From: Octopus sinensis
Lineage: Eukaryota
Length of the DNA: 64,000 nt
Direction: 5' to 3'
Assembly (NCBI RefSeq): GCF_006345805.1
Contig: NC_042997.1
Coordinates: forward strand, 69,440,001 to 69,504,000
Each line of letters begins with the position of its first letter. Position 1 is the first letter of the stretch. Made by a program: the position numbers and the translations under genes. Shown here piece by piece: positions 1,405 through 34,323 of the stretch. The notes beneath the pieces are model-generated. The model had not been told where the DNA came from. It worked only from the letters and a program-made list of their open reading frames with translations, and ran no database searches.

Positions 1405-2110
1405 AGAGATGAGAGCAAGGACTCATTTGCTGAGGTGGCGGCAAAAGCGACTAAAATACCCCGAGTTGAATAGGAAAGGAAACCTCCTGGCCGAGTTGAA
1501 ACGGCATGGGAAGGTGAGTGCATCAGTTACTTACCACCGCCTGAGCGTCGTGCCTTGTCACGCTTGACGCCTGACCAGAATGGAGCATTTGCTCTCACAC
1601 ATTTTGTGGAAGGGACGTGACCCACTGGTCAGACGACCCGGTTAATGTCAGCTTCCGCGGTGTAGAAGACTGCGCATGCCGTGGTTAATAATGCGCACAT
1701 ATGCGCTGGACATCGATGAAAATCAACTGTCGGGTCTATTCCTAAGGTCTTTTAGGCCGGGTCCTATGGATAATTTCCAGAAATGTCGGACCTGGTTGTG
1801 CTACCGGTGGACATTGCCTAAGCGAAACCGTCTTGCTGTGCTCGGACATTGGTGAATTGTGGTGTTATATCGAACAGCTGCTAACACGCGTCGGACGGAT
1901 CTGGCTATGGCCTCAACTCCATTGTGAAGATCATCCCACCGTCTTCCTTTGGCCTTTAAAGGCAGGCAGCTTTCGTCTGTTTCATGGCTAAGGCGAAAGC
2001 ATCCGTGTGATATACGAGGCTGAAAGCACTAAAGACAACACTTCGGCCAAAGGTGGAAGCATCCTTTGGCCAGTGCTAACATCGAAAAACCCAACATAGT
2101 TGGAAATAAA
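1405..2110 (+). mobile_element. Degenerate Tx1/L1-clade LINE, ORF2 3' end (zf-RVT/CCHC region)
   Basis: GC-richer island. Frameshifted translations MDNFQKCRTWLCYRWTLP, CLSETVLLCSDIGELWCYIEQLLTRVGRI and SIVKIIPPSSF..AFVCFMAKAK..YTRLKALK resemble Tx1 ORF2 C-termini (recalled, not searched). Confidence 0.55.
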
Positions 2111-3580
2111 CAGAAACTGTCTTTTGCTCTCTTTAACCTCTTTCTTTTTCTTTCTTTCTTTATTTATTTATTTATTTTGAAACCATGACAATTCAGTTCG
2201 TACAAAATTATTTGCGTATAAAGTAATTGTTACCCACTCTGCTGTAAAGATTCAAAACTGGTGTCATCATCGATGTCTGATACAAATGGAAGGTTTCCAA
2301 AAACGTTGCTTTCGTAACATATTGAGGAACGGCCTGGGAGATCTACAGAAGCAGCATTAGCGTATCGAAGAGATAAAAAGCAATGACAACATTTCAGCTT
2401 TTATCACGATCGGTCATTTGATACATGGTTACAGCAGCATTCACATTATTAAACTGAACGTCATCTGCATATCCATGCCGTTGAAGGGACTAGAATGGCT
2501 ACAGGAAAAATATTTAACTCCGGCCGTGAACGTTCATGAATATATGCACAGAGTAGTAAGATGTGCACATCCCCACCGCTAGATTCCTTTTTTTTTTATT
2601 CTTTGCAACTTTTTCTATTCATCTTATAAAAACGCAGCTCAAACTTCTAATTAGAGGCAGGAGATGTATGCATCTCAAAACATAACTTCAATTTTTGCAA
2701 AACATTCATCTGAATTTGCAAGGAAATCAATGCACACTTTTGGAAAACATGAGGTACTGACAACTCCATAAGCGATCATCAGTCAAAAAACCAATGAGTC
2801 AATGTGGCTTTATGTTATAGGGATGCGTTACTATATCTATGAACATGTGGATCAAATTTTCGCTTACATTTCATCGAATTAAAAGAAAAAAGAAAATATC
2901 TAATGTACGTCTTTGCAATCATTAAGCAAACCGAAGCTCTATATGCGTAAAGAAACGGTTAAAAGCGTATTCTTTTCGGCGTCAGTCTACCTACAAGTTT
3001 TGGTCGGATAAATTAAATCGCTTTTCCCTAAAAAACGAATTGTTTAACTGATAATACGAATAAGTCCGTCTCAATTAAAGGATGCACACAAAAAAAACAT
3101 ATGGTCAAAGGGAAATAACTAATAAAAAAGTTTACTTAGTTGTCTCCCTTGCACCCTTCTGCTCCTTGCTGTTTAAATTATTTTTGATGGGTGCTCAAAA
3201 AGTATAAACACCAACGTATTTGTTATATTTTCATTATATTCTGACAGATTCGAACGTGAATGTCTGTTTACTGTTCATTTTCATCACCGTTTGACTTTTC
3301 TCTGATTACGAAAGACACCAGCAATCAGCTATCAACGTCCGAATCTGCCAGATCTTATTGAGAATAAGTAGGTACGTTTATATGTTATTTCCATTCACAA
3401 AATTGCAAGTATGATTTAATACACGCATGAGGTATATTCTGTCTGTCCAAAACATCACAGATAAATGCTATTTCACATTTCATTCAAGAGTATTGACGAG
3501 TACAATTTTTTTCACTGATCACTGGGGGATTGTTTACTTTTAAGCGACCGTACATTTAACTGACGCTCGTCTACGTCGTT

Positions 3581-3744
<164 letters not shown>

Positions 3745-4264
3745 TCAAATCCGCTGCCAATGTTTCGGTGAGTTAAAACTGTCTTTAGATATTAAAAATA
3801 CATCAAATTTTCATCCCAGATTATTGATAGTTTCTGGTTGCTCTTATCTTACTGAGATCAGATCCTTCATGGGTCTATAAAAATAAAGAATAAATACAGA
3901 ACTGGAGTGAATTTAATTGAATCTCTCCTGAAATATACGAATTAGTGCCCAGGTTATGAATGTTTACATGTAAAGTAACGAATGACTGACTTACCGGTAA
4001 TATGTGTAAAGGGAGGTAAATGAGACTGAAAATGCGAGCAAAAAGCTGATAGCAAAAATGAACCAAAGCAGGCGATGATCGAGGGTTGTTGGTGCAACTG
4101 AAATATTGACAATAACAGAGAATGATACAGATCAGTTTGTTGTGTGTTAGCAATCTTTCAGAACGATACTTATGCTGTAGTGTATATGTCTGTCAATGAG
4201 TTTGTGGGGGTGAGGGTGAGAGAGAGAGGTGTGTGTGTATGCACATACACGCATAGATTTTTTT

Positions 4265-4480
4265 TATCTTTTATTTGATCCAGTTATTTGACTGCAGCCA
4301 TGCTAGGGCACCATCTTGGAGAATTTAAAGCGGAATGTGTTGATCCCAGCACTTCTTTTTTAAAAGACTATTACTTATTCTAATCATCATGTTTGACGAA
4401 TCGCTATGTTACGGGAACGTAAACATACCAGCCACATGTTTTCAAGCGGTGTGGTGGTGGAGGGGGAACAGACCATAAAC
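4265..4480 (-). mobile_element. SINE family 1, 3' (tail) part
   Basis: tttgactgcagccatgctagggcacc...gttacgggaacgtaaaca matches the tails at 12100, 18848, 45620 and 46215. Confidence 0.7.
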
Positions 4481-4487
4481 ATGTATA

Positions 4488-4930
4488 TCTCTTATTATAA
4501 AAGGCAGATTTTATCTGCCTCCCTTTGGGAGTTATACAAATCTACAATATAGGATTTCTTCAATTACAATTTACCTAGCAGTTTTAAGAGTACAATGCAT
4601 CGCGTCATGCCAGGTCCAGTTTTTAAAATTTAAACTCCAATTAAGCAAAATTTACAGAAAACTCACATTCTGGTGTGTGTGTCAAATGCTTTTCTTAGTC
4701 TGGTTTACACCACACGAAAACGCACACACACAGTGGGCAACGAAAAAATGAAAGTAAATGTATATTTGTTTCTGTCTATCACGCTGATAGATACATGAGT
4801 AAAATGTATGGGAAGCTAACAGATAACAGTGAGTGAAAATGTTCTTGGAAGAGAGTAAATTAGCGACAGTGATTTGAGGAAGACTAAACTGAAACTATGA
4901 AACAGTGTTTATGTATAAACAGACGACACT
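4488..4930 (+). mobile_element. Possible Helitron-derived 5' segment
   Basis: Begins a|TCtcttattataaaaggcag (A|TC start typical of Helitrons); no 3' CTAG end found. Confidence 0.35.
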
Positions 4931-5262
4931 TATAAACCCTTTCGTTACCAAACCGCCCGAATTACCTATTCATATTTCAATGAGAATATCAGAGTAAATC
5001 TCTTTAGTACATTCGTGAAAACACGTATTATACTTCGTAAACACTTCAAATACAGTTTTGTACAAAAAGCGAAGTGTAATTTTAATTCCGTGAATTATGG
5101 GAGATTTTTTTCCGAAATTGTTCCTATTGTGTTTTCAAAATTTGTAATTCTGACAAAAAATGGATACGAATTTCATTATATCAAGCAGCAAGTCAGAATT
5201 CGAAGAATTTTCTACTGAAGACCTTCATAAATCTAACTCTATGACTGAAAAAAAAAAAAGCA

Positions 5263-5652
5263 TCTTTATATAAGAGTGAAGTTGTGTGTCTGTCCCCTTC
5301 GATTTACATTCGTAATTACTCCCACATTTTGCGGTGCAGTTTAACAAAAGCGGGTATCTTATAGTCGTGATTCATATCGAGCCCTTCTGGGTATTAGCGC
5401 GCGTCTACGATGAGTCACGATTTTTTTTAAAAAGTTTACCATCATATTTTTCCATTTAATGCATTTTTTTCGCTTTATATAAGGGAAGAAACTCTCTAAA
5501 AATATCTACGATGTGTCAACGATTTAAAAAAATTTACCTTAATTTTTTTTCAATTTTTAATGCATTTTTTGCTATTTTTTGGCTATAACTCTCTAAAAAT
5601 GCTTATATAGTTATTCCCTTACAAACCGAGCAACGCCGGGCGATACTGCTAG
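5263..5652 (+). mobile_element. Non-autonomous Helitron (about 390 bp), copy 1
   Basis: A|TC 5' end; 3' hairpin ccgagcaacgccggg followed by CTAG|T; near-identical inverted copy at 6315-6709. Confidence 0.8.
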
Positions 5653-5687
5653 TATATATATGTATATATATATATATTATATAATAT

Positions 5688-5770
<83 letters not shown>

Positions 5771-5772
<2 letters not shown>

Positions 5773-6051
5773 CACTCCGTCGGTTACGACGACGAGGTTT
5801 CCATTTGATCCGATCAACGGAACAGCCTGCTCATGCAATTAACGTGCATGTGGTTGAGCACTCCACAGACACGTGCACCCTTAACGTAATTCTTAGGGAG
5901 ATTCAGCGTCACAGAGAGTGTGACAAGGCTGGCCCTTTGACATACAGGTATGCCAGCTAAGTGGAATAAAGTGTCTCGCGTCGCCGGGAATTGAACTCAC
6001 GATCTTGCAATCTGAGGCGAATGCCCTAACCACAAAGCCACGCGCCCTCAC
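5771..6051 (-). mobile_element. tRNA-derived SINE family 3
   Basis: Minus strand begins gtgagggcgcgtggctttgtggttaggg (A box) and gtgagttcaattccc (B box), ends ccgacggagtgcc; homologs at 47520 and 50879. Confidence 0.8.
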
Positions 6052-6084
6052 ACACACAAATACACACATAGAGTTACGACAGAC

Positions 6085-6165
6085 CGCTATAAGTTTCCTT
6101 CTATCAAATCCACTCACAAGACTTTGATCAGACACTTGCCCAAGATGCCACGAAGTGGGAATGAA
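6085..6165 (-). mobile_element. SINE family 1 head fragment
   Basis: aaatccactcacaag...cacttgcccaagatgccac matches the heads at 12400, 19455 and 36330. Confidence 0.6.
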
Positions 6166-6174
6166 GCCGGCGCT

Positions 6175-6216
<42 letters not shown>

Positions 6217-6230
6217 GTGTGTGTGTTGTG

Positions 6231-6284
<54 letters not shown>

Positions 6285-6314
6285 ATGTATGTACGTATAT
6301 ATTATATATATATA

Positions 6315-6709
6315 CTAGCAGTATCGCCCGGCGTTGCTCGGGTTTGTAAGAGAAATAACTATAAAGCATTTTTAGAGAGTTATAGCCCAAAAATCGCAAA
6401 AAAATGCATTAAAAATGGAAAAAAATGATGGTATAATTTTTTAAAATCGTGACTCATCGTAGACATTTTAGAGAGTTACTTCCCTTATATAATAGCGAAA
6501 ACAAATTCATTAAAATGGAAAAAAATGATGGTAATTTTTTTTTGAATCGTAGACTCATCGTAGACGCGCGCTAATACCCCAGAAGGGCTCGATATGAATC
6601 ACGACTATAAGATACCCGGTTTTGGTTAAACTGCACCGCAAAATGTGGGAGTAGTTAGGAATCTAAATCGTAGGAGACAGACACACAACTTCACTTTTAT
6701 ATATAAAGA
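6315..6709 (-). mobile_element. Non-autonomous Helitron, copy 2 (inverted relative to copy 1)
   Basis: CTAG at 6315-6318 next to gcccggcgttgctcggg hairpin; GA (=TC on minus) at 6708-6709. Confidence 0.8.
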
Positions 6710-6732
6710 TATATATATATATATATATATAT

Positions 6733-6920
6733 ATAAAGGGAAAGTTTACGAAAATAAACAATAGACGAAGGCAGGTGGTGTACAAACAAACAGATGTATT
6801 AGTATAGCGCTCAGGAATAGAAAAAGTCTATTACGTTTCGACCTACGCTCTTCTACAGAAAGATACACAGAAAAAAGCAAGGAGAGAGAAAAATGTGTGT
6901 AGTAGCTAACGATCTATCAT
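6733..6920 (-). mobile_element. Penelope-like terminal (pLTR) fragment, family A, with degenerate hammerhead
   Basis: Minus strand ctgtagaagagcgtaggtcgaaacgta (core A6 mutated); homologous to 40292-40590. Confidence 0.65.
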
Positions 6921-6926
6921 ATATAT

Positions 6927-6996
<70 letters not shown>

Positions 6997-7001
6997 ATAT
7001 A

Positions 7002-7062
<61 letters not shown>

Positions 7063-7081
7063 ATATACATATATATACATA

Positions 7082-7400
7082 TTAAATAAAATCAAAATGA
7101 GAACACAAGGATATCGCAGTACACGTGTTTCAAGCTTATAAACGACCTGTTCTTACATCAGTGTATAATAGATATAAAAGATGGTTTAAAGCTCTCTTCA
7201 GCCGCATACATTGTTATTCCAAAGAGTTACATCACACCATAAAAATATGAAAAATATGAAAAGTACACGTAGTATTACCCATTATAATAAGTATATCATA
7301 TCTCCTTGAGAAAGTGTATTTGTAAAATTTCGTAACTGTATAACTGTGTAAAGGTTCATTGGATCTCGAAAATCTGTCCATACTGTATCACCAGTCAACA
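7082..7400 (-). mobile_element. Penelope-like 3' terminal fragment carrying a hammerhead
   Basis: Non-repetitive insert between microsatellites containing the hammerhead below; extent approximate. Confidence 0.55.
7116..7205 (-). ncRNA. Type I hammerhead ribozyme motif (palindromic stem III)
   Basis: GCGG-CUGAAGA-GAGCUUUAAAC...GUUUAUAAGCUU-GAAA-CACGUG-UA^CUGC; full core, stems I-III pair. Confidence 0.75.
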
Positions 7401-7627
7401 TAGAGTGAATGTTAAATAGATTTGAATGGGTTCATTCTTCTTGTAAATATAGGAAGGAAAATAGAAAGAATGGAAGAAAAATAAGGAAGAAAAGAAAATA
7501 GAGAGAACATGGAGAGAAAAAATAGAGGGAAAAAAGGGAGAAAAAAGGAAGAGGAGAAAATAGAGAGAGGAAAACGTTTTCATATTCTTAGAGTGTGCTT
7601 CTTCTGATTTGTTTTTCTAAAAACACG

Positions 7628-7711
<84 letters not shown>

Positions 7712-7720
7712 GTCTGTCTA

Positions 7721-7803
<83 letters not shown>

Positions 7804-8113
7804 CCACACACGCACACATACATATATACACTTGGTGTATGTGTGCCTGCGTGAATAATATACTAATATATATGTGCATTCTACGATACAAGTAAGAGGA
7901 TGATTTTTTTCTCTCCGAACGCAGCGTTGCTGTTAACACAGCAGAAATAGTGGGCAATATTACCTTTAAAAGGCGGAAAAACTTGTTAACAAATTTTTCT
8001 GCTTTGTAAAAGTAATTTACCCAATATTTCTGCTGTTCTAACGGCAAAACTGTGTTCGAAAAACTATCATCTTCTTATTTATATCACACACACACACAAC
8101 GACACACACGCAG

Positions 8114-8650: not shown

Positions 8651-8879
8651 CGTAACTCTTGTATTCTTTTTCGCACATCGGTAACCCTGGTCACCTACGG
8701 TGGAATATAAATAAAAAGCATTTTTCTGCTCATCGTTTTTCGATAAAGAAAAATAATTTGCAACCTTCCATCTCAATAAAACACTATTATTCCTGAAAGC
8801 TATTTCTTTACATTTACTACGGATTGCTGGAAGCTAACTTTTCTCCTACACCTTGATCCCTGGATTTTACATTTGTGTT

Positions 8880-9100: not shown

Positions 9101-10273
9101 CATGACAGAAGTAACTAGACATCCAATAAAACATCCTTTTATGTTTATTCTAATTTGTAAACGTATATATTTTTTTGTTGAAATTTTTATGTTTCAAGTT
9201 ATTTATGTGACTTTTTAATGAAGCTATGTACAAAAGAAACTTTGGAACTGTCTGTATTTCAAAGAGGCCGTATTGTTGGTCATTCAGAAGATGGACATAG
9301 TCAGCGTAAAATCGGAGGAAACCTTGGAATCTCGCTTTCTACAGTTAATAGAGCGATTGTGCAATTCACCAGAGAAGGAAAGGAGTCCCCATCATCTCGT
9401 CCAGATCAACCAGGGCCTTCTGACAGGACTCTTTTCTTTGCTAAGAGAAGTGTGGAAGATAAACTTCGTTGCAAAGCCTCTGACATAGCAGAACAAGTTG
9501 ATGTTAGTCCCAGAACAGCTGTCAGGTATCTCCACTAACTTGGATAAAAGATTGCGGATAAAAGATTGCGCCAGTGAGATGGTGGAGAGGCCACTAGCAT
9601 TTTGGGACACTGTCATATTTTCTGATGAGTCCACATTTGCTGACAGTGGTCGAGTATGAGCCTGGATGCTCTGTGATCAAGAATTTGATGAGGTAAGATT
9701 GCAGCCAGCAATGAAACATGGCATCTATTCGGTGATAGTTTGGGGAGCAATTTGAGGCAATAGTCGATCAGAGCTGGTGGAGTTTGAGGGAAACATAAAC
9801 TGAGATAAATATGTGTCCATATTGCAGAAAGGATTCCTAATCTTCTCTAATGGTGAAATGATTAAAAAAGATTCTTTATTTAAGGCTAAAATGACCCAAG
9901 ATTTGTTGGATGAGAATGGCATTAAAAAGCTTCCATGGCCAAGCCACTCACCAGTTACCCTATTGAACACCTGAACCCTATTGAACACCTTTCGGACATA
10001 ATGGACAGGATGCTTCGTAAAAAGAACAAGAAAGTGTCCTCAAAGCCATATCTTTTGAGATTACTGCATGAAACTTGGCAAGAAATTCCACAAGAGAATA
10101 TTCATCTGATCAGTAACATGCCTAATAGGGTCCTTGCACTGAAAAATGCAAAGGGCATGCCCACTAAATATTAAATATTCACATTATAACAATTAATAAA
10201 TAATTTGAATGTATAATTTCAGATTTAAAGAAATTTTTTATGATTTCATGGCTGTCTATTTACTTCTGTCATG
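9101..10273 (+). mobile_element. Tc1-family DNA transposon, defective
   Basis: TIRs catgacagaagtaactagac / gtctatttacttctgtcatg; HTH ORF 9218-9538; VIFSDESTF motif and LNPIEHL (9935-10174); the second catalytic D segment appears deleted. Confidence 0.9.
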
Positions 10274-10679
10274 TATGTGTGTGTGTGTGTGGTGTGTGTA
10301 CACATATATACATATATACATAAATATGTGTGTGGATGTGTGTGTATTGATGTATGTATATGTATGGACTCGGTGGATGATTGTCCAGCTGTTTGGTTAA
10401 TTGGTCAACCTGTCTATTAACATTTCTGTGAGATGCTGGTTAGAATTCCAAAGACACGCAGACGCCTGACGTAGAATCAACTTCCCATTATGTGACGAGG
10501 CTGACTCATTGAATTACAGTTATATAAATCATCTTCTAAGCACGATTCCGTGTCCTCAATTTTATTCCCAGTTTATAAATCCACGTTTATACTAATAATA
10601 AATGGCACTCTTGATTATATTAGTAATTGCGCAAGAGACAATATGGAGAAGCTAGAGTTTTCAGAACACGAAATCAACT

Positions 10680-10750
10680 AGCTCGCTAGTTTAGTGGTAA
10701 GTATCCCCACCTGTCACGTGGGAGATCGAGTTCGATTCTCCTCCGGATAG
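10680..10750 (+). pseudogene. tRNA-Asp(GTC)-like pseudogene or SINE head
   Basis: tagtttagtggtaagtat D arm; perfect anticodon stem CCCAC-ctGTCac-GTGGG; gagttcgattctc T arm; acceptor stem does not pair. Confidence 0.75.
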
Positions 10751-11254
10751 GCTTGTTATTTTAACGGTTGTGCCCCAGCGTGATCGCATCTTTAAAGTTG
10801 AAACAATTTAGAGAATTTAAAGAATTTTCCTAACATGCACGTTAGTAATAGAATTTGTAAGAGGAACAGTAAAAATATGCAAGACGTTTCTCAGAATGAA
10901 CGCGTGACATAGTTTTGTATCCTTCTCAGAATTTGGCTTTTTACATACAACAACAAATCAAATAATTAAAGTGGGAAGTGAAAATGTGTTTCTACATGCA
11001 TGCACGTAGATTTTCACAATAGAAACCCTCACCTGGTGTTACGTGGGTCGTGTCTTTGACTATCCTTACGTCAGTTAAGTTTTTCGTAATGCCATGGTTT
11101 TCGTTATTTTCTGGAAGTGTATTTGACAACTCATGGAAAGTTATGTAATCTACTTTTCCATTACCGTTATTTAAGCCGCTGTAGCCTTTGAATGAAATTG
11201 AAAATAGAAACGGGAAAAAGAAGCGATAACTAGAAAACGGCGCCTTTGAAAGTT

Positions 11255-11276
11255 GGTGTGTGTGTGTGTGTGTGTG

Positions 11277-11309
<33 letters not shown>

Positions 11310-11560
11310 CGCATGTCAGTGTGTGTGTGCGCATGTGTGTGCACGCGCGAGCGTGCGTGTGTGTGTGTGTATGCATGTATGCATGTATGCATGTATATAG
11401 GTATATGTGAGTGCATATGTATACATATATGTATATGCATATGTGTATGTATGTGTGCAAGTTCATGTGTGTGTATATTTATATCTATTTATCTATTTAT
11501 CTTTTTCTCTCCCCTTTCTCTCCCTAAATATATACATGTATGTATGTATGTATGCATGTA
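11255..11560. repeat. (TG)n/(CATG,TATG)n compound microsatellite
   Basis: Directly visible. Confidence 0.9.
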
Positions 11561-12099: not shown

Positions 12100-12342
12100 T
12101 CTTTCAATCATTTGACTGTGGCCATACTGGGGCACCTCCTTGAAAGGTTTTAGTTGACCATCATACTTGGTTCTTTTTTTAAAACTTGATATTTATTCTA
12201 TTGGTATTATTTGTCGAACCACAAGGTTACAAGGACGTAAGCAAAAACATCGGTTGTCAAGCAGTAGAGGTAGAAAAATCAGAGACCCAAAGACACATAC
12301 ACACACACACACACATACACAGAGACGTATATGCATACGTAC

Positions 12343-24227: not shown

Positions 24228-25551
24228 CGAGGTGGTATCAAAATGTTCCAGGACTAGTTAAGTTTGATAAAAAAAATATCTTATTTACCTAAGTCTTAAC
24301 ATAATCTCCTTCGAAATAGTCACCTTGCGCAATGATACACCGGTCCCAGCGTTTCTGCCACTTTTGGAACCCAGCCTGAAAGTTATTTTCCGTGAGTGAG
24401 TCGAGAACTTTCTGCAATTCGCTCTTGATTTCGACATCGGTGTTAAAACGGCGACCTTTGAGTTGCATTTTCATCTTAGTGAAAGCCCGGAAGCCTACAT
24501 GTGCTAAATCTGGCGAATAGAATGGTTGCAGAAGCGATACCATGTTGTTTTTGGCGAGAAACTCACGAGTGAGGTGAGCTCGGTGACAGGGTGTATTGTC
24601 GTCGTGAAGAATCCAATTCTTCACGCTACTCAGATCCAGCCACTTGCACCGAATGTCCTGCCTCAAACGCTTCAGAACGTCGCAGTAGGACTTTCGACTG
24701 ACAATCTGACCCAGGTGGAGTGGGGTAGAGGGCGAATTCCCGATGCACAATAGCGCGGATATTGGAAAAACGATGAGCATGCTCTTGATTGAACTCCAGC
24801 TCTGTCATGCTTCCTTCGGTCGTGGAGATTGAAGGGTGCTTCCGTTGTGATGACTGCTGCTTCGTTTCAGGGTCGTACCTGTAGACCAAACTCAAGTCAC
24901 CGGGAATGATCCTCAACACGACGAATGGGTCATCAGCGGCACGCCGTTGGAGATTTTGACAGACTTCGACTCGATGTTCATTCTGCTCAGTGGTTAGCAG
25001 GCGGAGTGGTGCAGTCTTCATAGAGACACGCCGCATGCTCAATTCAGGCTCCAAGATTGCCTGCACGGAGCCATACGACAGACCAACAACATCAGCAATG
25101 TCAATGATTTTCCTCCGACGACTAATGGATTTTCTCCTTATTGCCGAGGGTGACACTTATGGCAGGTCTTCCAGATCGCTCATCGTCTTCCAAGGACGTT
25201 CTTCCGCTTTTGAAGTACCCGAGCCACTCAAAACATTGCGTATGACCCATTGCCTCGTCGCCGTAAGCTTGCTGGAGCATGTTCAATTTTTCTGTAGCAG
25301 ACTTCCCAAATTTAACGCAAAATTTCACGTTGGCTCTTTGTTCCAACTTCCTGTCCATGACAAAATCGCTGACTACAGCATATACATGATCACAAAAACA
25401 CAAATTTTACAACTTGCGAAGTAAACACATTAATGCCATCGGCACACTGCCTAATGAAGGTCACTACTGGCTCTCACTGCGCACGCAACCATATGCTGCC
25501 ATCTGTTAGCGCGCTACAGAACTAATCCGGTAACTTTTTGATACCACCTTC
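24228..25551 (-). mobile_element. mariner transposon, full length, frameshifted
   Basis: TIRs cgaggtggtatcaaaa / ttttgataccacct; three overlapping ORFs with QRANVKFC, PGDLSLVYRYDPETKQQS, ILHDDNTPCH and YSPDLA. Confidence 0.92.
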
Positions 25552-28518: not shown

Positions 28519-28704
28519 GAATAGAGTTTAATACCAAATCCATCTTCTTGTTAATTAATATCATATATACATACACACATATATACACGCACGTACTTAC
28601 ATATGTATGTGTGTGTGTGTGCATTTACCCCCACATAAATATCATTGTTGTTTTTGATGATGATGTTATTGTTGTTTAGACCCACATCAGTCCAGGTTAA
28701 ACAG

Positions 28705-28777
<73 letters not shown>

Positions 28778-28778
28778 C

Positions 28779-28812
<34 letters not shown>

Positions 28813-28850
28813 TAATAATAATAATGATAATAATAATAATAATAATAATA

Positions 28851-29522
28851 GCACCTGCAGAATATAAAGCAAGGCATGACAGAGTCGGCCAGTATTTACA
28901 TTGGACAATATGTCGGCATTATAAAACCAAAACCGCTGACAAATGGTATAAACATCATCCTGAAGCTGTGACTGAGGGAGAAAATGTATCGATTCTATGG
29001 GACTTCCCCGTGCAGACCGACAGGACTATAAAAGCTAATAAACCGGATATTATCATAAAAGATCAGACAAAAAAGATGTGTTTATTAATTGACATGAGTA
29101 TCCATTGCGATCACATTATAGCGGCGAAAGAATTTGACAAGATTGGTGAATATAAAGACCTGCTAATAGAAATTGAAAAAATGTGGCATCTCAAGGCGAC
29201 TACAGTACCAATGATTGTAGGATCTCTAGGAATGATAAAAAAAGGTACTGAAACCTATTTGAAAGTGATTCCAGGATTACCATCCCTACAGGAAGTGCAA
29301 AAAATCGTACTAACTGGAACGGCTCATGTACTGAGAAGAGCATTATCGCTGTGAAAACAACATCCATCCATGAATTTATTTATTTATTAATTTTTAAGTA
29401 CATATTTATCTGTGAATTTGCGTGTGTAATCTGGGAATGCATACAATGAGCTTCTCTGTCCTAGGTGTATGGAAAACACTCGGCGAGAAACGGAAGAAAA
29501 TTTGAAGAAAGAAGGAAAAACC
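28851..29522 (+). mobile_element. R4/Dong LINE, 5'-truncated (REL endonuclease plus 3'UTR), within (TAA)n
   Basis: Open frame RHDRVGQYLHW...ILWDFPVQTD..ANKPDIII...IDMS..KEFDKIGEYKDL; (TAA)n on both sides. Confidence 0.9.
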
Positions 29523-29598: not shown

Positions 29599-30668
<1,070 letters not shown>

Positions 30669-30674
30669 CTTCTT

Positions 30675-30770
<96 letters not shown>

Positions 30771-30797
30771 ATGATAATAATAAAAAAATATATATAT

Positions 30798-31024
30798 AAT
30801 GGGACAAGAACGCAAAACATCCAGATAGACGATACAAAAAAAAAAGGAAGGGGCATTCGAAGCCTTTAATCTTCAGTCAAGAACCGGATCATCCTCGCAA
30901 TTTCGGCTGATTAATCTTGAGATTGCTCCAATCTGGCCAGCACCAAGGAAAAATTAAGCTAAGAGCATTAGATTCATTAGAAAAAAGCTTCGAATGTATA
31001 TGAAACAAGGACGGGAAAACGGAC
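30798..31024 (-). mobile_element. PLE-type terminal repeat, family B
   Basis: Homologous to 19078-19340. Confidence 0.6.
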
Positions 31025-31026
31025 GA

Positions 31027-31524
31027 TGTAGGATTCTCAAAACCAGATAGGGGAAACCTAGTTCGAAGACTACAGATCCAATCTATCACTGAAAATGTAA
31101 AAATCTCGCTCAAATTTATACCGACTCTGCTTCCCACTCATTGATGCGAGAAGCCCTTCAAATTGCTAAAGTTCCAGTGAGAATAGCCAAAGCCATAGCA
31201 ACCTGACTTCGTCGTGGGCCACCAAACTGAAGTTAAATACAAGGAGTGATTGTATTATCACTGACGAATACAGTATCGCAGAGGCATATTCCAAGGAACA
31301 ACCTCTCTGTAATGTTTATGCTTCCTGCAAACCCCTTATTCGCGTTAAGAAAGCATGAAGGATATCACGCTGGTTCACAAGGAAGCAAACATACCAAAAT
31401 TACAGATTATTTCTTTGTGGATGACTTGGAACTACATGCAAAGTATATGCAGGAAATGAAAAAGAGTCTCACCCTGGTTACAACATTCTCAAAGAATATA
31501 GGGTTGAAGTTTGGTAATGATAAA

Positions 31525-31527
<3 letters not shown>
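31027..31527 (+). mobile_element. R4/Dong LINE fragments (C-terminal piece followed by RT core)
   Basis: LVRRLQIQSIT at 31027-31106, then YRRGIFQG-like segment and ITDYFFVDDLELHAK...TFSKNIGLKFGNDK (FVDD). Confidence 0.75.
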
Positions 31528-31591
<64 letters not shown>

Positions 31592-31754
31592 TAGATAAAA
31601 ACACCTTTTATCAATTCAAAATGAACAATTAAATTACACCATCTAGAAAATTACGTATAATAGAAATATTAAAATTAAAATAGCAATGAAATACCGACGA
31701 TTAAGTAAATTGCAAAAAAATTAATGAAAACGTATATAATTTGTATATATACAT

Positions 31755-31788
<34 letters not shown>

Positions 31789-32038
31789 ATATTATATATA
31801 TATATATAATATATATATATATATAATTATGTGAAATAGAAAGATGAATAATCTTGTTGTAGATTAATCAAAAGTTAACCGATACCTTAGTAGCAAAAAT
31901 CACAGCAGTAAACAGCACGGTTGGAGGTACAACCATCTGGCGTTGCAACCGTGCGTTGGTGCGGATAATTGAAATTAAAACATTATTGGTGAATTGAAGA
32001 AATGGAGCTGAACGCAGATTGAACAGAAATCGTTTTAT

Positions 32039-32124
32039 TTCATTCTACACGTGTTCGAAAGGCACAAATTACCAAAATCCGATTGAATAATGGGACCATA
32101 TTGTGTCTTTCTCTTCAGGAAGAA
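32039..32124 (-). ncRNA. Hammerhead-like motif, one A short in the GAAA core
   Basis: UUCUUC-CUGAAGA-GAAAGACACAA...UUGUGCCUUUC-GAA-CACGUG-UA^GAAUGAA; stem II pairs 10 of 11. Confidence 0.6.
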
Positions 32125-32716
32125 AAAAGGAAATCCGTTAGAGAAACAAAAACAGAACAGAGGCGGAGCAAAAACCAAATCGAACTATGCTCCTAAGAGC
32201 CCATGGCGAAACTGTTTATCAGTGTATGCTGAGAACCGGTGGCTGAAGAATTCTACAGGTCAGGCATCGGTCAATCATGTGGGTGAGGGTGTATAGATGT
32301 TCTTAGTGACCGAGAATAAAGTTCTGACTATTTAAGGAATATGGATGTTTTATAAGGGGCGAGAAAAAATCTACTTAGAGACGTGTGTGTGTGTATACTG
32401 TTCTATATATGTGTGTGTTGGCGTAGGGGTAGAAAACATTTTTTGTGTACGTGTGTGCGTTTGATCGTTCGGCTGTCAGTGGCTACTGCCGTGATAACCG
32501 TTGGGTGGCAGAAAGAAAAATATATATATATTATGTTTTATGTGTGTGTGTGTTCATCTGAGCCTGCCTTGTCAAGGAAACCCCCCGCTGTGAAAAAACC
32601 AAGCCCCGTTTGTCTTACAGGAGTAATTCCCCTTGCAGTGGATAATCGTAGATATCTTAAAGGCTATTTCAGAATTTGTTACTAAGGGCTATGGGTGCCG
32701 GTATTATTTATAAACG

Positions 32717-33955
32717 CTATTTAAAAGCCAGATAAGTGTAACGCCGCCAATGGGGGCATCGAAAAGCCGACTGTAAGAGCCCGTTTACCATCCGGCCTCT
32801 GGCAAACAAAATATGGAAGAGTTCGGAGACACAAAGGTTGCACTGTCTTCTGCCCCTATCAAATGGGAGGGCCACCGACAAAATTGACCATTCCAGCCTG
32901 TAGCTTAAGTTCGTATCCTTCAGTCGCCATATTAGCTTACTGAGTCCCGTGGTCTGGCGCTTGTTCACGTCCCGAAAAGTTGCGTAATGATTGGAGACAC
33001 GCAAAGACAATCTTGAGGATGATGCCCCTACATAAGTGAAGACATCTAAGTCCGTGTAAACCTTGCATTGGTAGACGGCGTTTTTGATCTTGGAGTTCGC
33101 CGACGTAAATCTTAATCTGCTAGGATTAGTTTCTGAAATTAGAACTGCGTTCCTGTCACTATATTCGTTCCGAGACCTGCAGCCGCTTACTACTCTATTT
33201 TCCACTACGTCACTATTAACTATAGGAATAACCCCTGATTCTCCACTATCTATCAGAGTACTGTCATTGCTAGTGCCCGTGGTGCTGCTATTGCGGGAAA
33301 TGATGCTGGGGTTGCTATTGGGGCTCTCTACCCTACTCCCATTGTTACCGTCAACCACAACACCCCTATTTATAACTATACCCCTAGTGGGTACTCCCTG
33401 GCTGGAGATGAGATTATGTGTCACTGTACTGGCTCTCATATCATTATTACTACTATAATTATTCCTACTGAGCATTAAACCGGGAGCGGAAGAGGCTGTG
33501 CCTCCGGAAAAAGGTGATAGGGTCTTAGTAAGTAGCCTATTATTATGGGAGGCGATTATCTGGGCGAGGTTTTTAGTGTTGGAGAAAGCTATCCTAACTT
33601 TATGTGAGTTAACCGTGGAGTAATATTTGGAATTTCTGGGGAAGTTATTGGCGATGGCTTGTCTAAACAAGAGGGGGAGGTTAGTTCTAATCTGCTTACC
33701 AAAGGGGATTACAAACCATATATGCTTATTCCTATCAGTGTGATGGGTCGGGACGCCAGCTCTCGCACTCTGGTGGGTGATTCTCGGATAAATAACGGGT
33801 CTTGGGTTAGTGTAAGACCTCCCGGACCGATAATTATCCTTGTTCGCTAAATTAAATGCGGGGGCGACTACCCCGGCATCCGCCGCGCTCCCGTCCTTAC
33901 TTAAAATGTTAATGTTATTATATACGGCCCTATCCTGATGACCGAATGATGGCAT
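32717..33955 (-). CDS. PLE-derived protein: RT thumb/linker, S/N/G-rich spacer, GIY-YIG endonuclease (412 aa)
   Basis: HIWFVIPFGKQIRTN (cf. PLE IIWFNPP motif); NAVY aa292-295, YVG 308-310, R319, H323, CNLC 372-375, E378, N391, RCPH 399-402; no YxDD motif; no internal stop. Confidence 0.8.
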   Translation of the reverse strand: MPSFGHQDRAVYNNINILSKDGSAADAGVVAPAFNLANKDNYRSGRSYTNPRPVIYPRITHQSARAGVPTHHTDRNKHIWFVIPFGKQIRTNLPLLFRQAIANNFPRNSKYYSTVNSHKVRIAFSNTKNLAQIIASHNNRLLTKTLSPFSGGTASSAPGLMLSRNNYSSNNDMRASTVTHNLISSQGVPTRGIVINRGVVVDGNNGSRVESPNSNPSIISRNSSTTGTSNDSTLIDSGESGVIPIVNSDVVENRVVSGCRSRNEYSDRNAVLISETNPSRLRFTSANSKIKNAVYQCKVYTDLDVFTYVGASSSRLSLRVSNHYATFRDVNKRQTTGLSKLIWRLKDTNLSYRLEWSILSVALPFDRGRRQCNLCVSELFHILFARGRMVNGLLQSAFRCPHWRRYTYLAFK

Positions 33956-34012
33956 CGGAAGGGCTGTTCAATCTGCGTTCAGCTCCATTTCTTCAATTCA
34001 CCAATAATGTTT

Positions 34013-34051
<39 letters not shown>

Positions 34052-34072
34052 TTGTGTGTGTGTGTATATATA

Positions 34073-34103
<31 letters not shown>

Positions 34104-34149
34104 CATTATATATATTTATTTATATATTTATATATATTTATTTATATAT

Positions 34150-34323
34150 ATGATTCTGTTTTTGTTTTCGTTTCTCATTGTGTTCGACGTTTTGGGGTGT
34201 CCTGTACCTATATATGCATGTATATATACATATAGATGTATGTACGTACATATATGTATGTATATATGCATATGTTTTATTTATTATTTTGTTATATATA
34301 TATATATATATATATACATGTGT

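What the first reader, a model, noticed from the sequence alone, without database searches (positions are those of the whole stretch)
31976..34014. RT-less Penelope-like unit: intact 412-aa GIY-YIG ORF plus hammerhead inside a perfect 51-bp inverted repeat
Seen: 31976-32026 (taaaacattattggtgaattgaagaaatggagctgaacgcagattgaacag) is the exact reverse complement of 33964-34014. Between them on the minus strand lie an ATG-started, stop-free 412-codon ORF, a 3' region of about 690 nt and a hammerhead-like motif. It is the only long intact non-repetitive ORF in 64 kb; the other TE coding regions here are broken or short truncated pieces. Established: the protein starts in the PLE RT thumb/linker and ends in a GIY-YIG domain with the expected Tyr, YxG, Arg, His, Glu and Asn residues and a CxxC...RCxH tail. 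This resembles the C-terminal-EN PLE group with a CxCx5C linker (Hydra-type, assigned from recall). It has no RT catalytic motif. The CxCx5C motif is decayed to SGCRSRNEY inside an S/N/G-rich spacer of about 145 aa (aa ~145-290). Inference: the default explanation is a recent 5'-truncated PLE with an inverted 3' tail, which is known PLE behaviour. The more interesting alternative is a self-standing endonuclease-only family that supplies its own nuclease and borrows RT in trans.
Basis: partly seen in the sequence, partly recalled or inferred. Interest (0 to 1): 0.8.

Follow-up and report, generated by a model that had tools for sequence, protein, structure and literature searches.

The report
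Truncated Penelope-like retrotransposon copy in octopus-type DNA
This is an ordinary, recently inserted, 5'-truncated copy of a known kind of retrotransposon (a Hydra-clade Penelope-like element) sitting in a (TA)n microsatellite; its open reading frame is intact because the copy is young, not because it is a self-standing endonuclease gene.

Summary
The 51-nt perfect inverted repeat, the 412-codon ATG-started ORF on the minus strand, the 690-nt 3' region and a hammerhead-like motif are all present.

Three corrections:
- The insertion runs 147 nt past the inverted repeat, to 31829. It lies inside a (TA)n array.
- The hammerhead lacks one A of its GAAA box. Three Octopus sinensis relatives keep that box.
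- The missing CxCx5C motif and the N/S-rich spacer are shared by all Octopus relatives fetched that span this region. One of them still carries the reverse transcriptase (RT), so this is not decay of this copy.

Homology to RT-bearing relatives starts exactly at the inner edge of the inverted repeat. Related copies break off at different 5' points. Some have a short inverted piece, others none. An Argonauta locus has a 2.7-kb perfect inverted partner copy. This is documented PLE behaviour.

The endonuclease-only family is not supported, but copy number in the source genome could not be tested. Interest is low.

The parts
31733..31827 (.). (TA)n microsatellite flanking the 3' end of the insertion. 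This is half of the target.
   Evidence: Tandem Repeats Finder. Hydra-clade PLEs insert into (TA)n (PMC8557442).
31829..31975 (-). 147-nt 'tail' beyond the inverted repeat. It is part of the element. It is inferred to be the first part of the family's 5'UTR, copied from a read-through or tandem template.
   Evidence: 85-90% identical to L001 12311-12446 and present in L009 7554-7700. In Argonauta L010 the equivalent 156-nt tail is identical to the start of the 5'UTR within the pLTR. The last 14 nt of the tail lie directly upstream of the 5'UTR of L001 copy 1.
31976..32026 (-). Segment X, the 3'-side arm of the inverted repeat. It is the tail-less 3' terminus of the element.
   Evidence: Its outer edge matches the position where the L001 inverted repeat ends. 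The tail-less copy L002 ends about 16 nt short of that edge and Argonauta copy B ends at the equivalent 3' terminus; both run straight into (TA)n.
32040..32124 (-). Type I hammerhead-like motif with a defective core. CUGAAGA is at 32118-32112. Helix II is 32111-32101 paired with 32067-32057. GA plus ACACGUGU is at 32056-32047. The predicted cleavage site is 32046|32045, 19 nt upstream of X.
   Evidence: Alignments A4 and A5. The structure is 84.8% paired, against 31-54% when slid, with 4 compensatory pairs in 4 sequences. One A of GAAA is missing compared with L001, L009 and L002. No Rfam hit.
32125..32716 (-). Rest of the 3'UTR. It is not conserved with the O. sinensis copies.
   Evidence: BLASTN finds no match for this stretch.
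32720..33109 (-). GIY-YIG endonuclease domain, aa 283-412 of the ORF. The stop codon is at 32717-32719.
   Evidence: Family alignments A1, A3 and A6. AlphaFold2 pLDDT is 87.8. The top Foldseek PDB hits are all GIY-YIG nucleases: T4 EndoII, Hpy188I and I-TevI. dN/dS against L009 is 0.08.
33110..33499 (-). N/S/G-rich, predicted disordered spacer, aa 153-282. It stands where relatives have the CxCx5C motif.
   Evidence: pLDDT is below 50 for aa 152-275. The same kind of spacer occurs in P0001, P0002, P0003 and L009. Argonauta and the other full-length relatives aligned keep CNCRx5C.
33500..33730 (-). Conserved linker domain, aa 76-152: IWF.(I/P)PF...TN...F....FP...K.(A/S)(F/Y)S...N...II..HN..L.
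   Evidence: A1 and A6. pLDDT is 70-96. dN/dS is 0.17-0.19.
33731..33955 (-). N-terminal 75 aa of the ORF. It is poorly conserved and lies after the RT thumb. The ATG at 33953-33955 is an internal Met codon of the L001-type polyprotein.
   Evidence: M1 aligns with M102 of P0001, which is codon 418 of the 667-aa L001 ORF. The Met is not conserved in L009. dN/dS is 0.67-0.74.
33956..33963 (-). Last 8 nt of element body before the 5' truncation point. The junction reads ...GAACAG|CCCTTCCG-ATG.
   Evidence: Nucleotide and protein homology to L001 starts at 33963/33964, with 1 nt of overlap with the arm.
33964..34014 (-). 5'-side arm of the inverted repeat. It is an inverted copy of X: a minimal, extremely 5'-truncated partner copy in inverted orientation.
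   Evidence: The same feature (36-42 nt, perfect) occurs in L001 at a different 5' break point. In Argonauta L010 the inverted partner is 2,741 nt. PLE literature: PMC8557442.
34013..34151 (.). (TA)n microsatellite flanking the 5' end of the insertion. This is the other half of the target.

Best explanation
**What it is.** The region 31829-34014 (minus strand) is one dead-on-arrival insertion of a Hydra-clade Penelope-like retrotransposon. The host genome looks cephalopod (octopus-like).

**Shown**
- The insertion lies in a (TA)n array.
- Its body starts at codon 415 of the 667-codon ORF of its closest RT-bearing relative, a copy that is itself broken (a full ORF of this lineage would be about 830 codons). 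The whole reverse transcriptase is therefore missing.
- It keeps the linker domain, a disordered N/S-rich spacer, the GIY-YIG endonuclease, the 3'UTR and a hammerhead motif.
- At the 3' end it carries segment X followed by a 147-nt tail.
- At the 5' end it carries a 51-nt inverted copy of X.

**Inferred mechanism**
1. The element's endonuclease nicked (TA)n.
2. Reverse transcription was primed on a read-through or tandem transcript, at a UA-rich patch at the end of the 5'UTR-proximal segment. That segment became the tail.
3. Synthesis ran back through X, the hammerhead, the 3'UTR and the endonuclease coding region.
4. It stopped 8 nt upstream of an internal Met codon.
5. The other target end was sealed with a very short second cDNA in inverted orientation. 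This cDNA began at the UA-rich patch at the end of X and ran 51 nt, stopping 19 nt short of the hammerhead cleavage site. It may have copied a second or hammerhead-cleaved RNA.

This short inverted piece is the minimal form of the inverted 5'-truncated partner copy that typifies PLE insertions.

**Why the ORF is open.** The insertion is young: the arms are 51/51 identical and 412 codons carry no stop or frameshift. Its first in-frame ATG happens to lie 3 codons from the break.
For: **Family**
- phmmer finds 2,659 relatives. Many are 650-780 aa with the match at their C-terminus.
- The consensus of about 60 full-length relatives shows RWK, ADKT, YRDD, CNCRx5C, YIG..R..H, CxLC..E and N...CRH. 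These are the diagnostic Hydra-clade traits in PMC8557442, along with (TA)n targeting and hammerheads.

**Truncation**
- Homology to the RT-bearing O. sinensis copy (L001 9053-11056, with the endonuclease at 11074-11559) starts exactly at the inner arm edge.
- 5' ends differ among relatives: L009 at codon 292 with no inverted repeat, L002 at about codon 458 with neither inverted repeat nor tail, and L001 copies 1 and 2 within the 5'UTR.

**Inverted piece and tail are PLE habits**
- L001 has a 42-nt perfect inverted repeat at the homologous X position.
- Argonauta L010 has a 2,741-nt perfect inverted pair plus a 411-nt pLTR, with a 156-nt tail (the start of the 5'UTR) at one end only.
- The literature describes inverted 5'-truncated copies and a one-sided tail.

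**Endonuclease fold and selection**
- Fold.
- Purifying selection acts on the linker and endonuclease between lineages.
Against: - No copy of the same subfamily from the source genome could be retrieved. Copy number and 5'-end distribution for this exact subfamily are therefore unknown. All comparisons use copies only 66-75% identical at nucleotide level.
- The ATG lying 8 nt from the break point is a coincidence under this explanation.
- The tail here (147 nt) is longer than the 30-40 bp described for PLE tails.
- That the tail equals the 5'UTR start is shown directly only for the Argonauta family. In Octopus it rests on a 14-nt match plus analogy.
- The priming steps are inference.
Confidence: 0.9

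Rival explanations
1. A self-standing, RT-less family encodes only the linker and the GIY-YIG endonuclease. It is bounded by the inverted repeat and is mobilised with RT supplied in trans by full-length PLEs.
For: - The ORF is intact, starts with ATG and keeps all catalytic residues.
- The linker and endonuclease are under purifying selection between lineages.
- Stand-alone GIY-YIG endonucleases are known near Terminons, which are PLE relatives (PMC8557442).
Against: - The 5' boundary is not a family feature. Relatives break at other codons, and the inverted piece sits at whatever break point each copy has.
- The 3' arm is internal, 147 nt from the true 3' end.
- The Met is an internal residue of the polyprotein and is not conserved in L009.
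- The hammerhead core is damaged in this copy.
- No second copy is in the window or in the protein collections.
- The dN/dS signal is what is expected from selection on full-length masters.
Confidence: 0.04
2. The element is a DNA transposon with 51-bp terminal inverted repeats that encodes a GIY-YIG nuclease.
For: A perfect inverted repeat flanks a nuclease ORF.
Against: - Homologous sequence continues 147 nt beyond the 3'-side arm.
- Closest relatives encode an RT with YRDD and ADKT motifs upstream in the same frame.
- L009 and L002 have no inverted repeat.
- A hammerhead and (TA)n targeting fit PLEs.
Confidence: 0.01
3. The inverted repeat is an assembly artefact, such as a fold-back or chimeric join at a PLE end, and not a real feature of the locus.
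For: PLE inverted and tandem structures are known to cause assembly problems (PMC8557442).
Against: - The arm is only 51 nt, which single reads span easily.
- An equivalent short perfect inverted repeat occurs at the homologous position in an independent assembly of another species (L001).
Confidence: 0.03
4. The ORF is a domesticated host gene, as the O. sinensis annotation of its homologue ('myb-like protein I') would imply.
For: P0001 is an annotated gene model.
Against: - P0001 is a piece of a longer 667-aa PLE ORF with an RT, lying inside an element bounded by an inverted repeat.
- Its name reflects the N-rich spacer.
- The window ORF is embedded in a complete PLE 3' structure within a microsatellite.
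Confidence: 0.01

Closest known systems
Hydra-clade Penelope-like elements (Craig, Yushenova, Rodriguez & Arkhipova 2021, PMC8557442)
   Same: - C-terminal GIY-YIG endonuclease without the CCHH motif.
- CxxC and CxH flanking the catalytic E and N.
- A linker domain.
- Insertion into (TA)n.
- A hammerhead in the 3' region.
- Frequent 5' truncation, an inverted partner copy and a one-sided tail.
- Relatives carry the RWK, DKT and YRDD motifs in their RT.
   Different: - This copy has no RT.
- The Octopus sublineage lacks the CxCx5C motif. In its place is a 110-145-aa N/S-rich disordered spacer.
- The elements are about 3.6 kb rather than under 3 kb.
- The hammerhead has a 55-65-nt helix II. It would fall outside the 7-17-nt spacer used to call canonical hammerheads in that paper.
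Canonical C-terminal-endonuclease PLEs (Penelope/Poseidon, Neptune, Nematis)
   Same: - Same overall architecture and insertion habits: pLTRs, inverted 5'-truncated copies and tails.
- Type I hammerhead with a short palindromic helix III, thought to act as a dimer (PMC4209133).
   Different: - Those families have a CCHH motif inside the endonuclease and a CX2-5CxxC linker (the latter absent in Penelope/Poseidon).
- Their RT motifs differ: DKG, and GxKF/Y.
L1 'twin priming' 5' inversions (named from general knowledge, not tested here)
   Same: Both give a 5'-truncated retrotransposon copy whose 5' end carries an inverted piece. The piece is best explained by the second target end priming on RNA.
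   Different: - In L1 the inverted piece is a region upstream of the direct part and is copied once.
- Here it duplicates a 3'-terminal segment that is also present in direct orientation, so a second template or a template switch is needed.
Stand-alone GIY-YIG endonucleases associated with Terminons (cited in PMC8557442)
   Same: They are a precedent for a PLE-type endonuclease encoded apart from RT.
   Different: - Those endonucleases carry CX2-5CxxC and CCHH motifs and large insertions.
- They belong to giant Athena-type elements.
- Nothing here shows a separate family.

Membership tests
Hydra-clade PLE | C-terminal GIY-YIG endonuclease lacking CCHH, with CxxC and CxH around the conserved E and N | tested here: met
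   The window ORF has C372xxC375, E378, N391 and C400xH402 in nearly invariant family columns, and no CCHH.
Hydra-clade PLE | CxCx5C linker motif upstream of the endonuclease | tested here: not met
   The motif is absent in the window ORF and in all Octopus copies that span this region (L001, P0002, P0003), including RT-bearing L001 copy 1. It is present in Argonauta L010 and in the other full-length relatives aligned. This is a lineage-level loss within the clade, not grounds for exclusion.
Hydra-clade PLE | RT with RWK, DKT and a divergent RT4(B) motif, plus YRDD | tested here: not met
   No RT sequence is present in this copy. The alignment starts after the thumb. The closest relative, L001, has SDKT, FIQFDI..FYPS and YRDD upstream of the same linker, spacer and endonuclease. 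The family consensus has all of these motifs.
Hydra-clade PLE | Insertion into (TA)n | tested here: met
   (TA)n lies on both sides of 31829-34014. The same holds for L001 (both sides), L009 (both sides), L002 (3' side only) and L010.
Hydra-clade PLE | Hammerhead ribozyme in the 3' region or pLTR | tested here: inconclusive
   The motif is present at 32124->32040, and its helices are supported by 4-sequence covariation. The GAAA box is one A short in this copy; L001, L009 and L002 keep the GAAA box, although L001 has a G10.1/G11.1 mismatch at the base of helix II. No Rfam hit. Cleavage was not assayed.
Hydra-clade PLE | PLE insertion habits: 5' truncation, an inverted partner copy, a tail at one end | tested here: met
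.
GIY-YIG nuclease superfamily | GIY-YIG fold (beta-beta-alpha...beta-alpha core) with Tyr, Tyr-x-Gly, Arg, His/Tyr, Glu and Asn | tested here: met
   - All residues are present.
- AlphaFold2 pLDDT is 87.8, with topology E-E-H-H-E-H.
- The top 3 PDB Foldseek hits (domain model) and top 7 (whole model) are all GIY-YIG enzymes. Each hit is weak on its own (E 0.06-0.5, TM 0.3-0.5).
- Pfam and PDB sequence searches find nothing.
Hammerhead ribozyme, type I | Conserved core CUGANGA...GAAA with A15.1-U16.1 and an N17 cleavage site | tested here: not met
   CUGAAGA is present. The run reads C-GA-ACACGUGU-A rather than C-GAA-ACAUAUGU-A. Either A14 or the A15.1-U16.1 pair is therefore lost. Core positions G12, A13 and A14 are essential (established knowledge of the ribozyme).
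   The source genome is not searchable. There is no second copy in the window, the exact protein is not on record, and no near relative was found. Related copies have different boundaries.

The most novel reading that the evidence does not exclude
The truncated copy, or sister copies with the same break, could be expressed as a stand-alone linker-plus-GIY-YIG nickase. Such a protein might act in trans on (TA)n sites, either helping RT-only or damaged PLE copies or having been taken over by the host.

A milder, better-founded novelty concerns the Octopus sublineage of Hydra PLEs. It has lost the CxCx5C zinc-finger-like linker, replacing it with a disordered N/S-rich spacer, yet it still inserts into (TA)n. 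This argues that the motif is not what aims these elements at (TA)n.
Probability: 0.04. Interest if true: 0.55.

Novelty: new member of a known kind. Interest (0 to 1): 0.15.

Why it matters
For the genome scan, this finding can be filed as a routine transposable-element fragment.

For PLE specialists there are three small points:
- **Targeting.** Octopus Hydra-clade elements keep (TA)n targeting without the CxCx5C linker. This bears on the suggestion in Craig et al. 2021 that the linker is tied to targeted insertion.
- **Tail and inverted piece.** The one-sided tail can be read as the first part of the 5'UTR, copied from a read-through or tandem template. The inverted partner copy can be as short as about 30-50 nt, and it ends at a UA-rich patch. 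Both hint that (TA)n target ends prime on UA-rich patches of the RNA.
- **Detection and naming.** Cephalopod Hydra hammerheads carry a 55-65-nt helix II and escape both Rfam and the usual descriptors. Two public gene names ('myb-like protein I', 'GATA zinc finger domain-containing protein 14-like') are PLE fragments.

Tried and rejected
- **Pfam** on the ORF and on eight full-length relatives: no RT or GIY-YIG hit. These sequences are too divergent for the models held here. Two precomputed Pfam accessions (PF26215, PF28514) are listed for relatives, but they gave no hit in this Pfam copy and I could not find out what they are.
- **Rfam**, at gathering and at E<=10 on the window and E<=1 on L002: no hammerhead. 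The sub-threshold mir-297/mir-466 hits are microsatellite artefacts.
- **Family profile against PDB sequences:** nothing at E<=10.
- **Regular-expression scan** for CUGANGA...GAAA: nothing in the unit. This led to the finding that the GAAA box is damaged.
- **Exact-protein look-up** of the ORF: not on record.
- **Word-indexed protein searches:** the whole ORF gave one hit. The endonuclease domain alone gave none.
- **Tail as an inverted copy of the 5' leader:** I first considered this because both share TAACCGATACC. Local alignment shows only that 11-12-nt motif (4-8 of 300 shuffles score as high). I dropped the idea in favour of the 5'UTR read-through reading, which the Argonauta locus supports.
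- **tRNA-like origin of the tail:** ARAGORN finds nothing there.
- **Minimum-free-energy folding of single hammerhead sequences:** helix II is recovered but not the three-way junction. This is expected for type I motifs with a dimeric helix III.
Full report
**1. Observation**

The two arms 31976-32026 and 33964-34014 are 51 nt long and 100% complementary. The sequence is complex, so chance is excluded.

Between the arms, on the minus strand, lies an ORF at 33955->32717. It has 412 codons, an ATG start and a TAG stop. An in-frame TGA sits five codons upstream, inside the arm. It is the only ORF over 250 aa in the 64 kb. The other four of at least 200 aa are microsatellite translations or an overlapping pair of 222 and 241 aa at 54.6-55.4 kb.

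From the stop codon to the inner arm is 690 nt. BLAST of the unit and of its protein against the window finds no second copy.

**2. What the protein is**

Pfam gives nothing. The word-indexed protein search gives one hit: P0001 from Octopus sinensis, annotated 'myb-like protein I', 53% identical over the first 223 aa.

The exhaustive phmmer search gives 2,659 relatives. Many are 650-780 aa long and match the query through their C-terminal third, in two stretches (query about 56-145 and about 286-410).

Alignment with full-length relatives gives this consensus order:
- ...RWKA...ADKT.N.Y...LKDHK...CRLINP.KS...
- F.QFDI..FYPSI...FDVTMGS.DGAE.CELVGL...GLYRDDGL...
- VNFLDVTL...SNHP...AL..SGY (the thumb)
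- IWFNPPF...TNIG..F..LI.KHFP...K.SYS..N...II..HN.K.L (the linker domain)
- CNCR.K..CPL.G.CL
- VVY.A.V...YIG.T...FK.R..NH..SF...T.LSK..W.LK...I.W.I...C.LCL.EK..I...LNKR.EL.SKCRH

These are the traits by which Craig et al. 2021 defined the Hydra clade of Penelope-like elements.

The window ORF aligns only from just after the thumb onward. It keeps Y295, Y308/G310, R319, H323, C372/C375, E378, N391 and C400/H402.

AlphaFold2 results:
- Residues 275-412 alone fold with mean pLDDT 87.8 and pTM 0.80, in the strand-strand-helix-helix-strand-helix order of GIY-YIG domains.
- In the whole ORF, residues about 75-150 and about 285-410 are folded. Residues 152-275 are below pLDDT 50.

Foldseek against the PDB puts only GIY-YIG nucleases at the top: T4 EndoII, Hpy188I and I-TevI. 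These are ranks 1-3 for the domain model and ranks 1-7 for the whole model. Each hit is weak on its own (E 0.06-0.5).

**3. Relatives with their DNA**

- **L001 (O. sinensis, CM016882.1), copy 1.** This locus holds P0001. The copy has a perfect 42-nt inverted repeat (8757-8798 / 12269-12310). It has a 667-codon ORF with SDKT, FIQFDI..FYPS and YRDD, followed by the same thumb, linker and N-rich spacer. A frameshift follows, then the endonuclease. An RT-bearing element therefore carries the same spacer and also lacks CxCx5C.
- **Other Octopus sequences.** P0002 and P0003 show the same spacer and the same loss, and the L009 copy carries a homologous spacer.
- **Argonauta hians (L010).** The element keeps CNCRVPENCP. 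The loss is thus a trait of the Octopus sublineage, not decay of this copy.
- **Where the window body starts.** The window ORF aligns to L001 from codon 415 of the 667-codon ORF. At nucleotide level the homology starts at 33963/33964, exactly at the inner edge of the arm, with one shared G.
- **The Met.** It corresponds to an internal Met of L001 and is not conserved in L009.

**4. Boundaries and 5' ends**

The element does not stop at 31976. The next 147 nt on the sense strand (31975->31829) are 85-90% identical to L001 12311-12446. This 'tail' is also present in L009. It ends at (TA)n. The insertion 31829-34014 lies between (TA)n tracts at 31733-31827 and 34013-34151.

| Copy | 5' start | 5' inverted piece | 3' tail |
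|---|---|---|---|
| Window | codon 415 | 51 nt, copy of X | yes, 147 nt |
| L009 | codon 292, next to a short (TA)n | none | yes |
| L002 | about codon 458 | none | none; ends near the end of X, directly at (TA)n |
| L001 copy 1 | 14 nt before the end of an upstream tail, followed by the rest of the 5'UTR | 36-42 nt, copy of X | yes |
| L001 copy 2 | in the 5'UTR, at TAACCGATACC | about 33 nt resembling the inverted end of the tail | copy interrupted |

The Argonauta locus L010 is the textbook PLE complex:
- a 2,741-nt perfect inverted pair;
- a 411-nt pLTR carrying the hammerhead upstream of the full-length copy;
- a 156-nt tail on the inverted copy only, identical to the first 156 nt of the 5'UTR in the pLTR;
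- a direct copy that ends without a tail, at (TA)n.

This matches the published description: frequent 5' truncation, an inverted 5'-truncated copy at the 5' end that forms flanking inverted repeats, and an extension (tail) often at one end only (PMC8557442).

By analogy, the window's 51-nt arm is an extremely truncated inverted partner copy that ends at the tail-less 3' terminus. The window's tail is 5'UTR-proximal sequence copied from a read-through or tandem template. In Octopus this reading rests on the 14-nt tail end found upstream of the 5'UTR of L001 copy 1, plus the analogy.

**5. Hammerhead**

Rfam finds nothing, even at permissive thresholds.

Alignment of the window with L001, L009 and L002 shows a type I motif. 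It has CUGA(A/U)GA, a long helix II (55-65 nt between the two core boxes), GAAA, and a self-complementary 8-mer helix III. That 8-mer is ACAUAUGU in L001 and L009, ACAUGUGU in L002 and ACACGUGU in the window. The cleavage triplet is GUA or GUC.

On the four sequences the proposed structure is 84.8% paired, against 31-54% when the partners are slid. Four pairs show compensatory changes. A short palindromic helix III is the hallmark of metazoan PLE hammerheads, which are thought to work as dimers (PMC4209133).

The window copy reads C-GA-ACACGUGU-A where the others read (C/U/G)-GAA-ACAUAUGU-A. One A of the GAAA box is missing. By established knowledge of the core, this should abolish cleavage. 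'Hammerhead-like' is therefore the right word. The predicted cleavage site (32046|32045) lies 19 nt upstream of X.

**6. Selection**

| Region of window ORF | dN/dS against O. sinensis copies |
|---|---|
| Linker domain | 0.17-0.19 |
| Endonuclease | 0.08 (dS saturated) |
| Spacer | 0.34-0.38 |
| First 55 codons | 0.67-0.74 |

This pattern is expected for divergence between active full-length lineages. It does not separate the hypotheses.

**7. Verdict**

- The 5' boundary is copy-specific.
- The 3' arm is internal.
- The spacer and the missing CxCx5C are shared with an RT-bearing relative.
- The ribozyme core is damaged.
- No sister copy is visible.

**What I could not do.** I could not census the source genome. 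The exact protein is not on record, and no near relative was found. A residual 4% is left for the alternative.

**Minor points of interest**
- (TA)n targeting persists without CxCx5C.
- The tail and the short inverted piece can be read as products of priming at two UA-rich patches. This is inference.
- The long-helix-II hammerhead escapes standard detection.

Noticed in passing
L010:1646-8012 (Argonauta hians, BAAFZT010000013.1): A textbook PLE complex. It has a 2,741-nt 100% identical inverted pair (1802-4542 / 5272-8012) and a 411-nt pLTR (4541-4951). A 156-nt tail sits on the inverted copy only and equals the start of the 5'UTR. (TA)n lies at both ends. The perfect identity suggests a very recent insertion.
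   Followed up: partly
P0001 (O. sinensis) and P0154 (Argonauta hians): The public gene names 'myb-like protein I' and 'GATA zinc finger domain-containing protein 14-like' belong to fragments of Hydra-clade PLE ORFs. The names evidently come from the asparagine-rich spacer.
   Followed up: partly
window 31829-31975 vs L001:12311-12446: The non-coding tail is more conserved between the window and the O. sinensis copies (85-90%) than the coding region (68-72%). It contains an 8-bp hairpin, CACGGTTG...CAACCGTG. The motif TAACCGATACC of the 5'UTR occurs in it in reverse complement (window 31879-31889). The reason for this conservation is unexplained.
   Followed up: partly
window ~62259 (minus strand): CUGACGA-A-GAGC-UCC-GCUC-GAAAC looks like a minimal PLE-type hammerhead, with an extra base between positions 9 and 10.1. 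It may mark a fragment of another PLE.
   Followed up: no
window 28701-29351 (+) and 30464-30865 (-): Two ORF fragments in opposite orientation share a conserved C-terminal sequence (...KDLLIEIEKMWHLKA.T.P.IVG.LGMIKKGTE...LTGT.HVLRRALS). A similar sequence lies just 5' of the PLE copy in O. sinensis L002. It is probably the tail of a retrotransposon polyprotein. No informative Pfam hit.
   Followed up: partly
window 9182-9535 (+), 24292-25156 (-): Tc1/mariner-type remnants: an HTH_23 domain (E 8.5e-11) and a weak DDE_3 match (E 5e-4, below the cut-off).
   Followed up: partly
window 10678-10752 (+): ARAGORN predicts a tRNA-Asp (GTC). Whether it is a real gene or the head of a tRNA-derived SINE was not checked.
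   Followed up: no
window 31237-31629 (+): An ORF fragment with an RT-like ...YFFVDDLEL... motif runs into an (AT)30 tract, about 200 nt from the PLE's 3' flank. No Pfam hit. It is probably a piece of another retroelement.
   Followed up: partly
window 34034-34116: The sub-threshold Rfam matches to mir-297 and mir-466 are produced by the (TA)n(TG)n microsatellite and are not microRNA genes.
   Followed up: yes
L002:2965-3729 (minus strand): A second, much more distant Hydra-type PLE fragment (24-25% aa identity to the L001 proteins) lies 2-3 kb from the L002 copy. O. sinensis therefore holds several divergent Hydra lineages.
   Followed up: no
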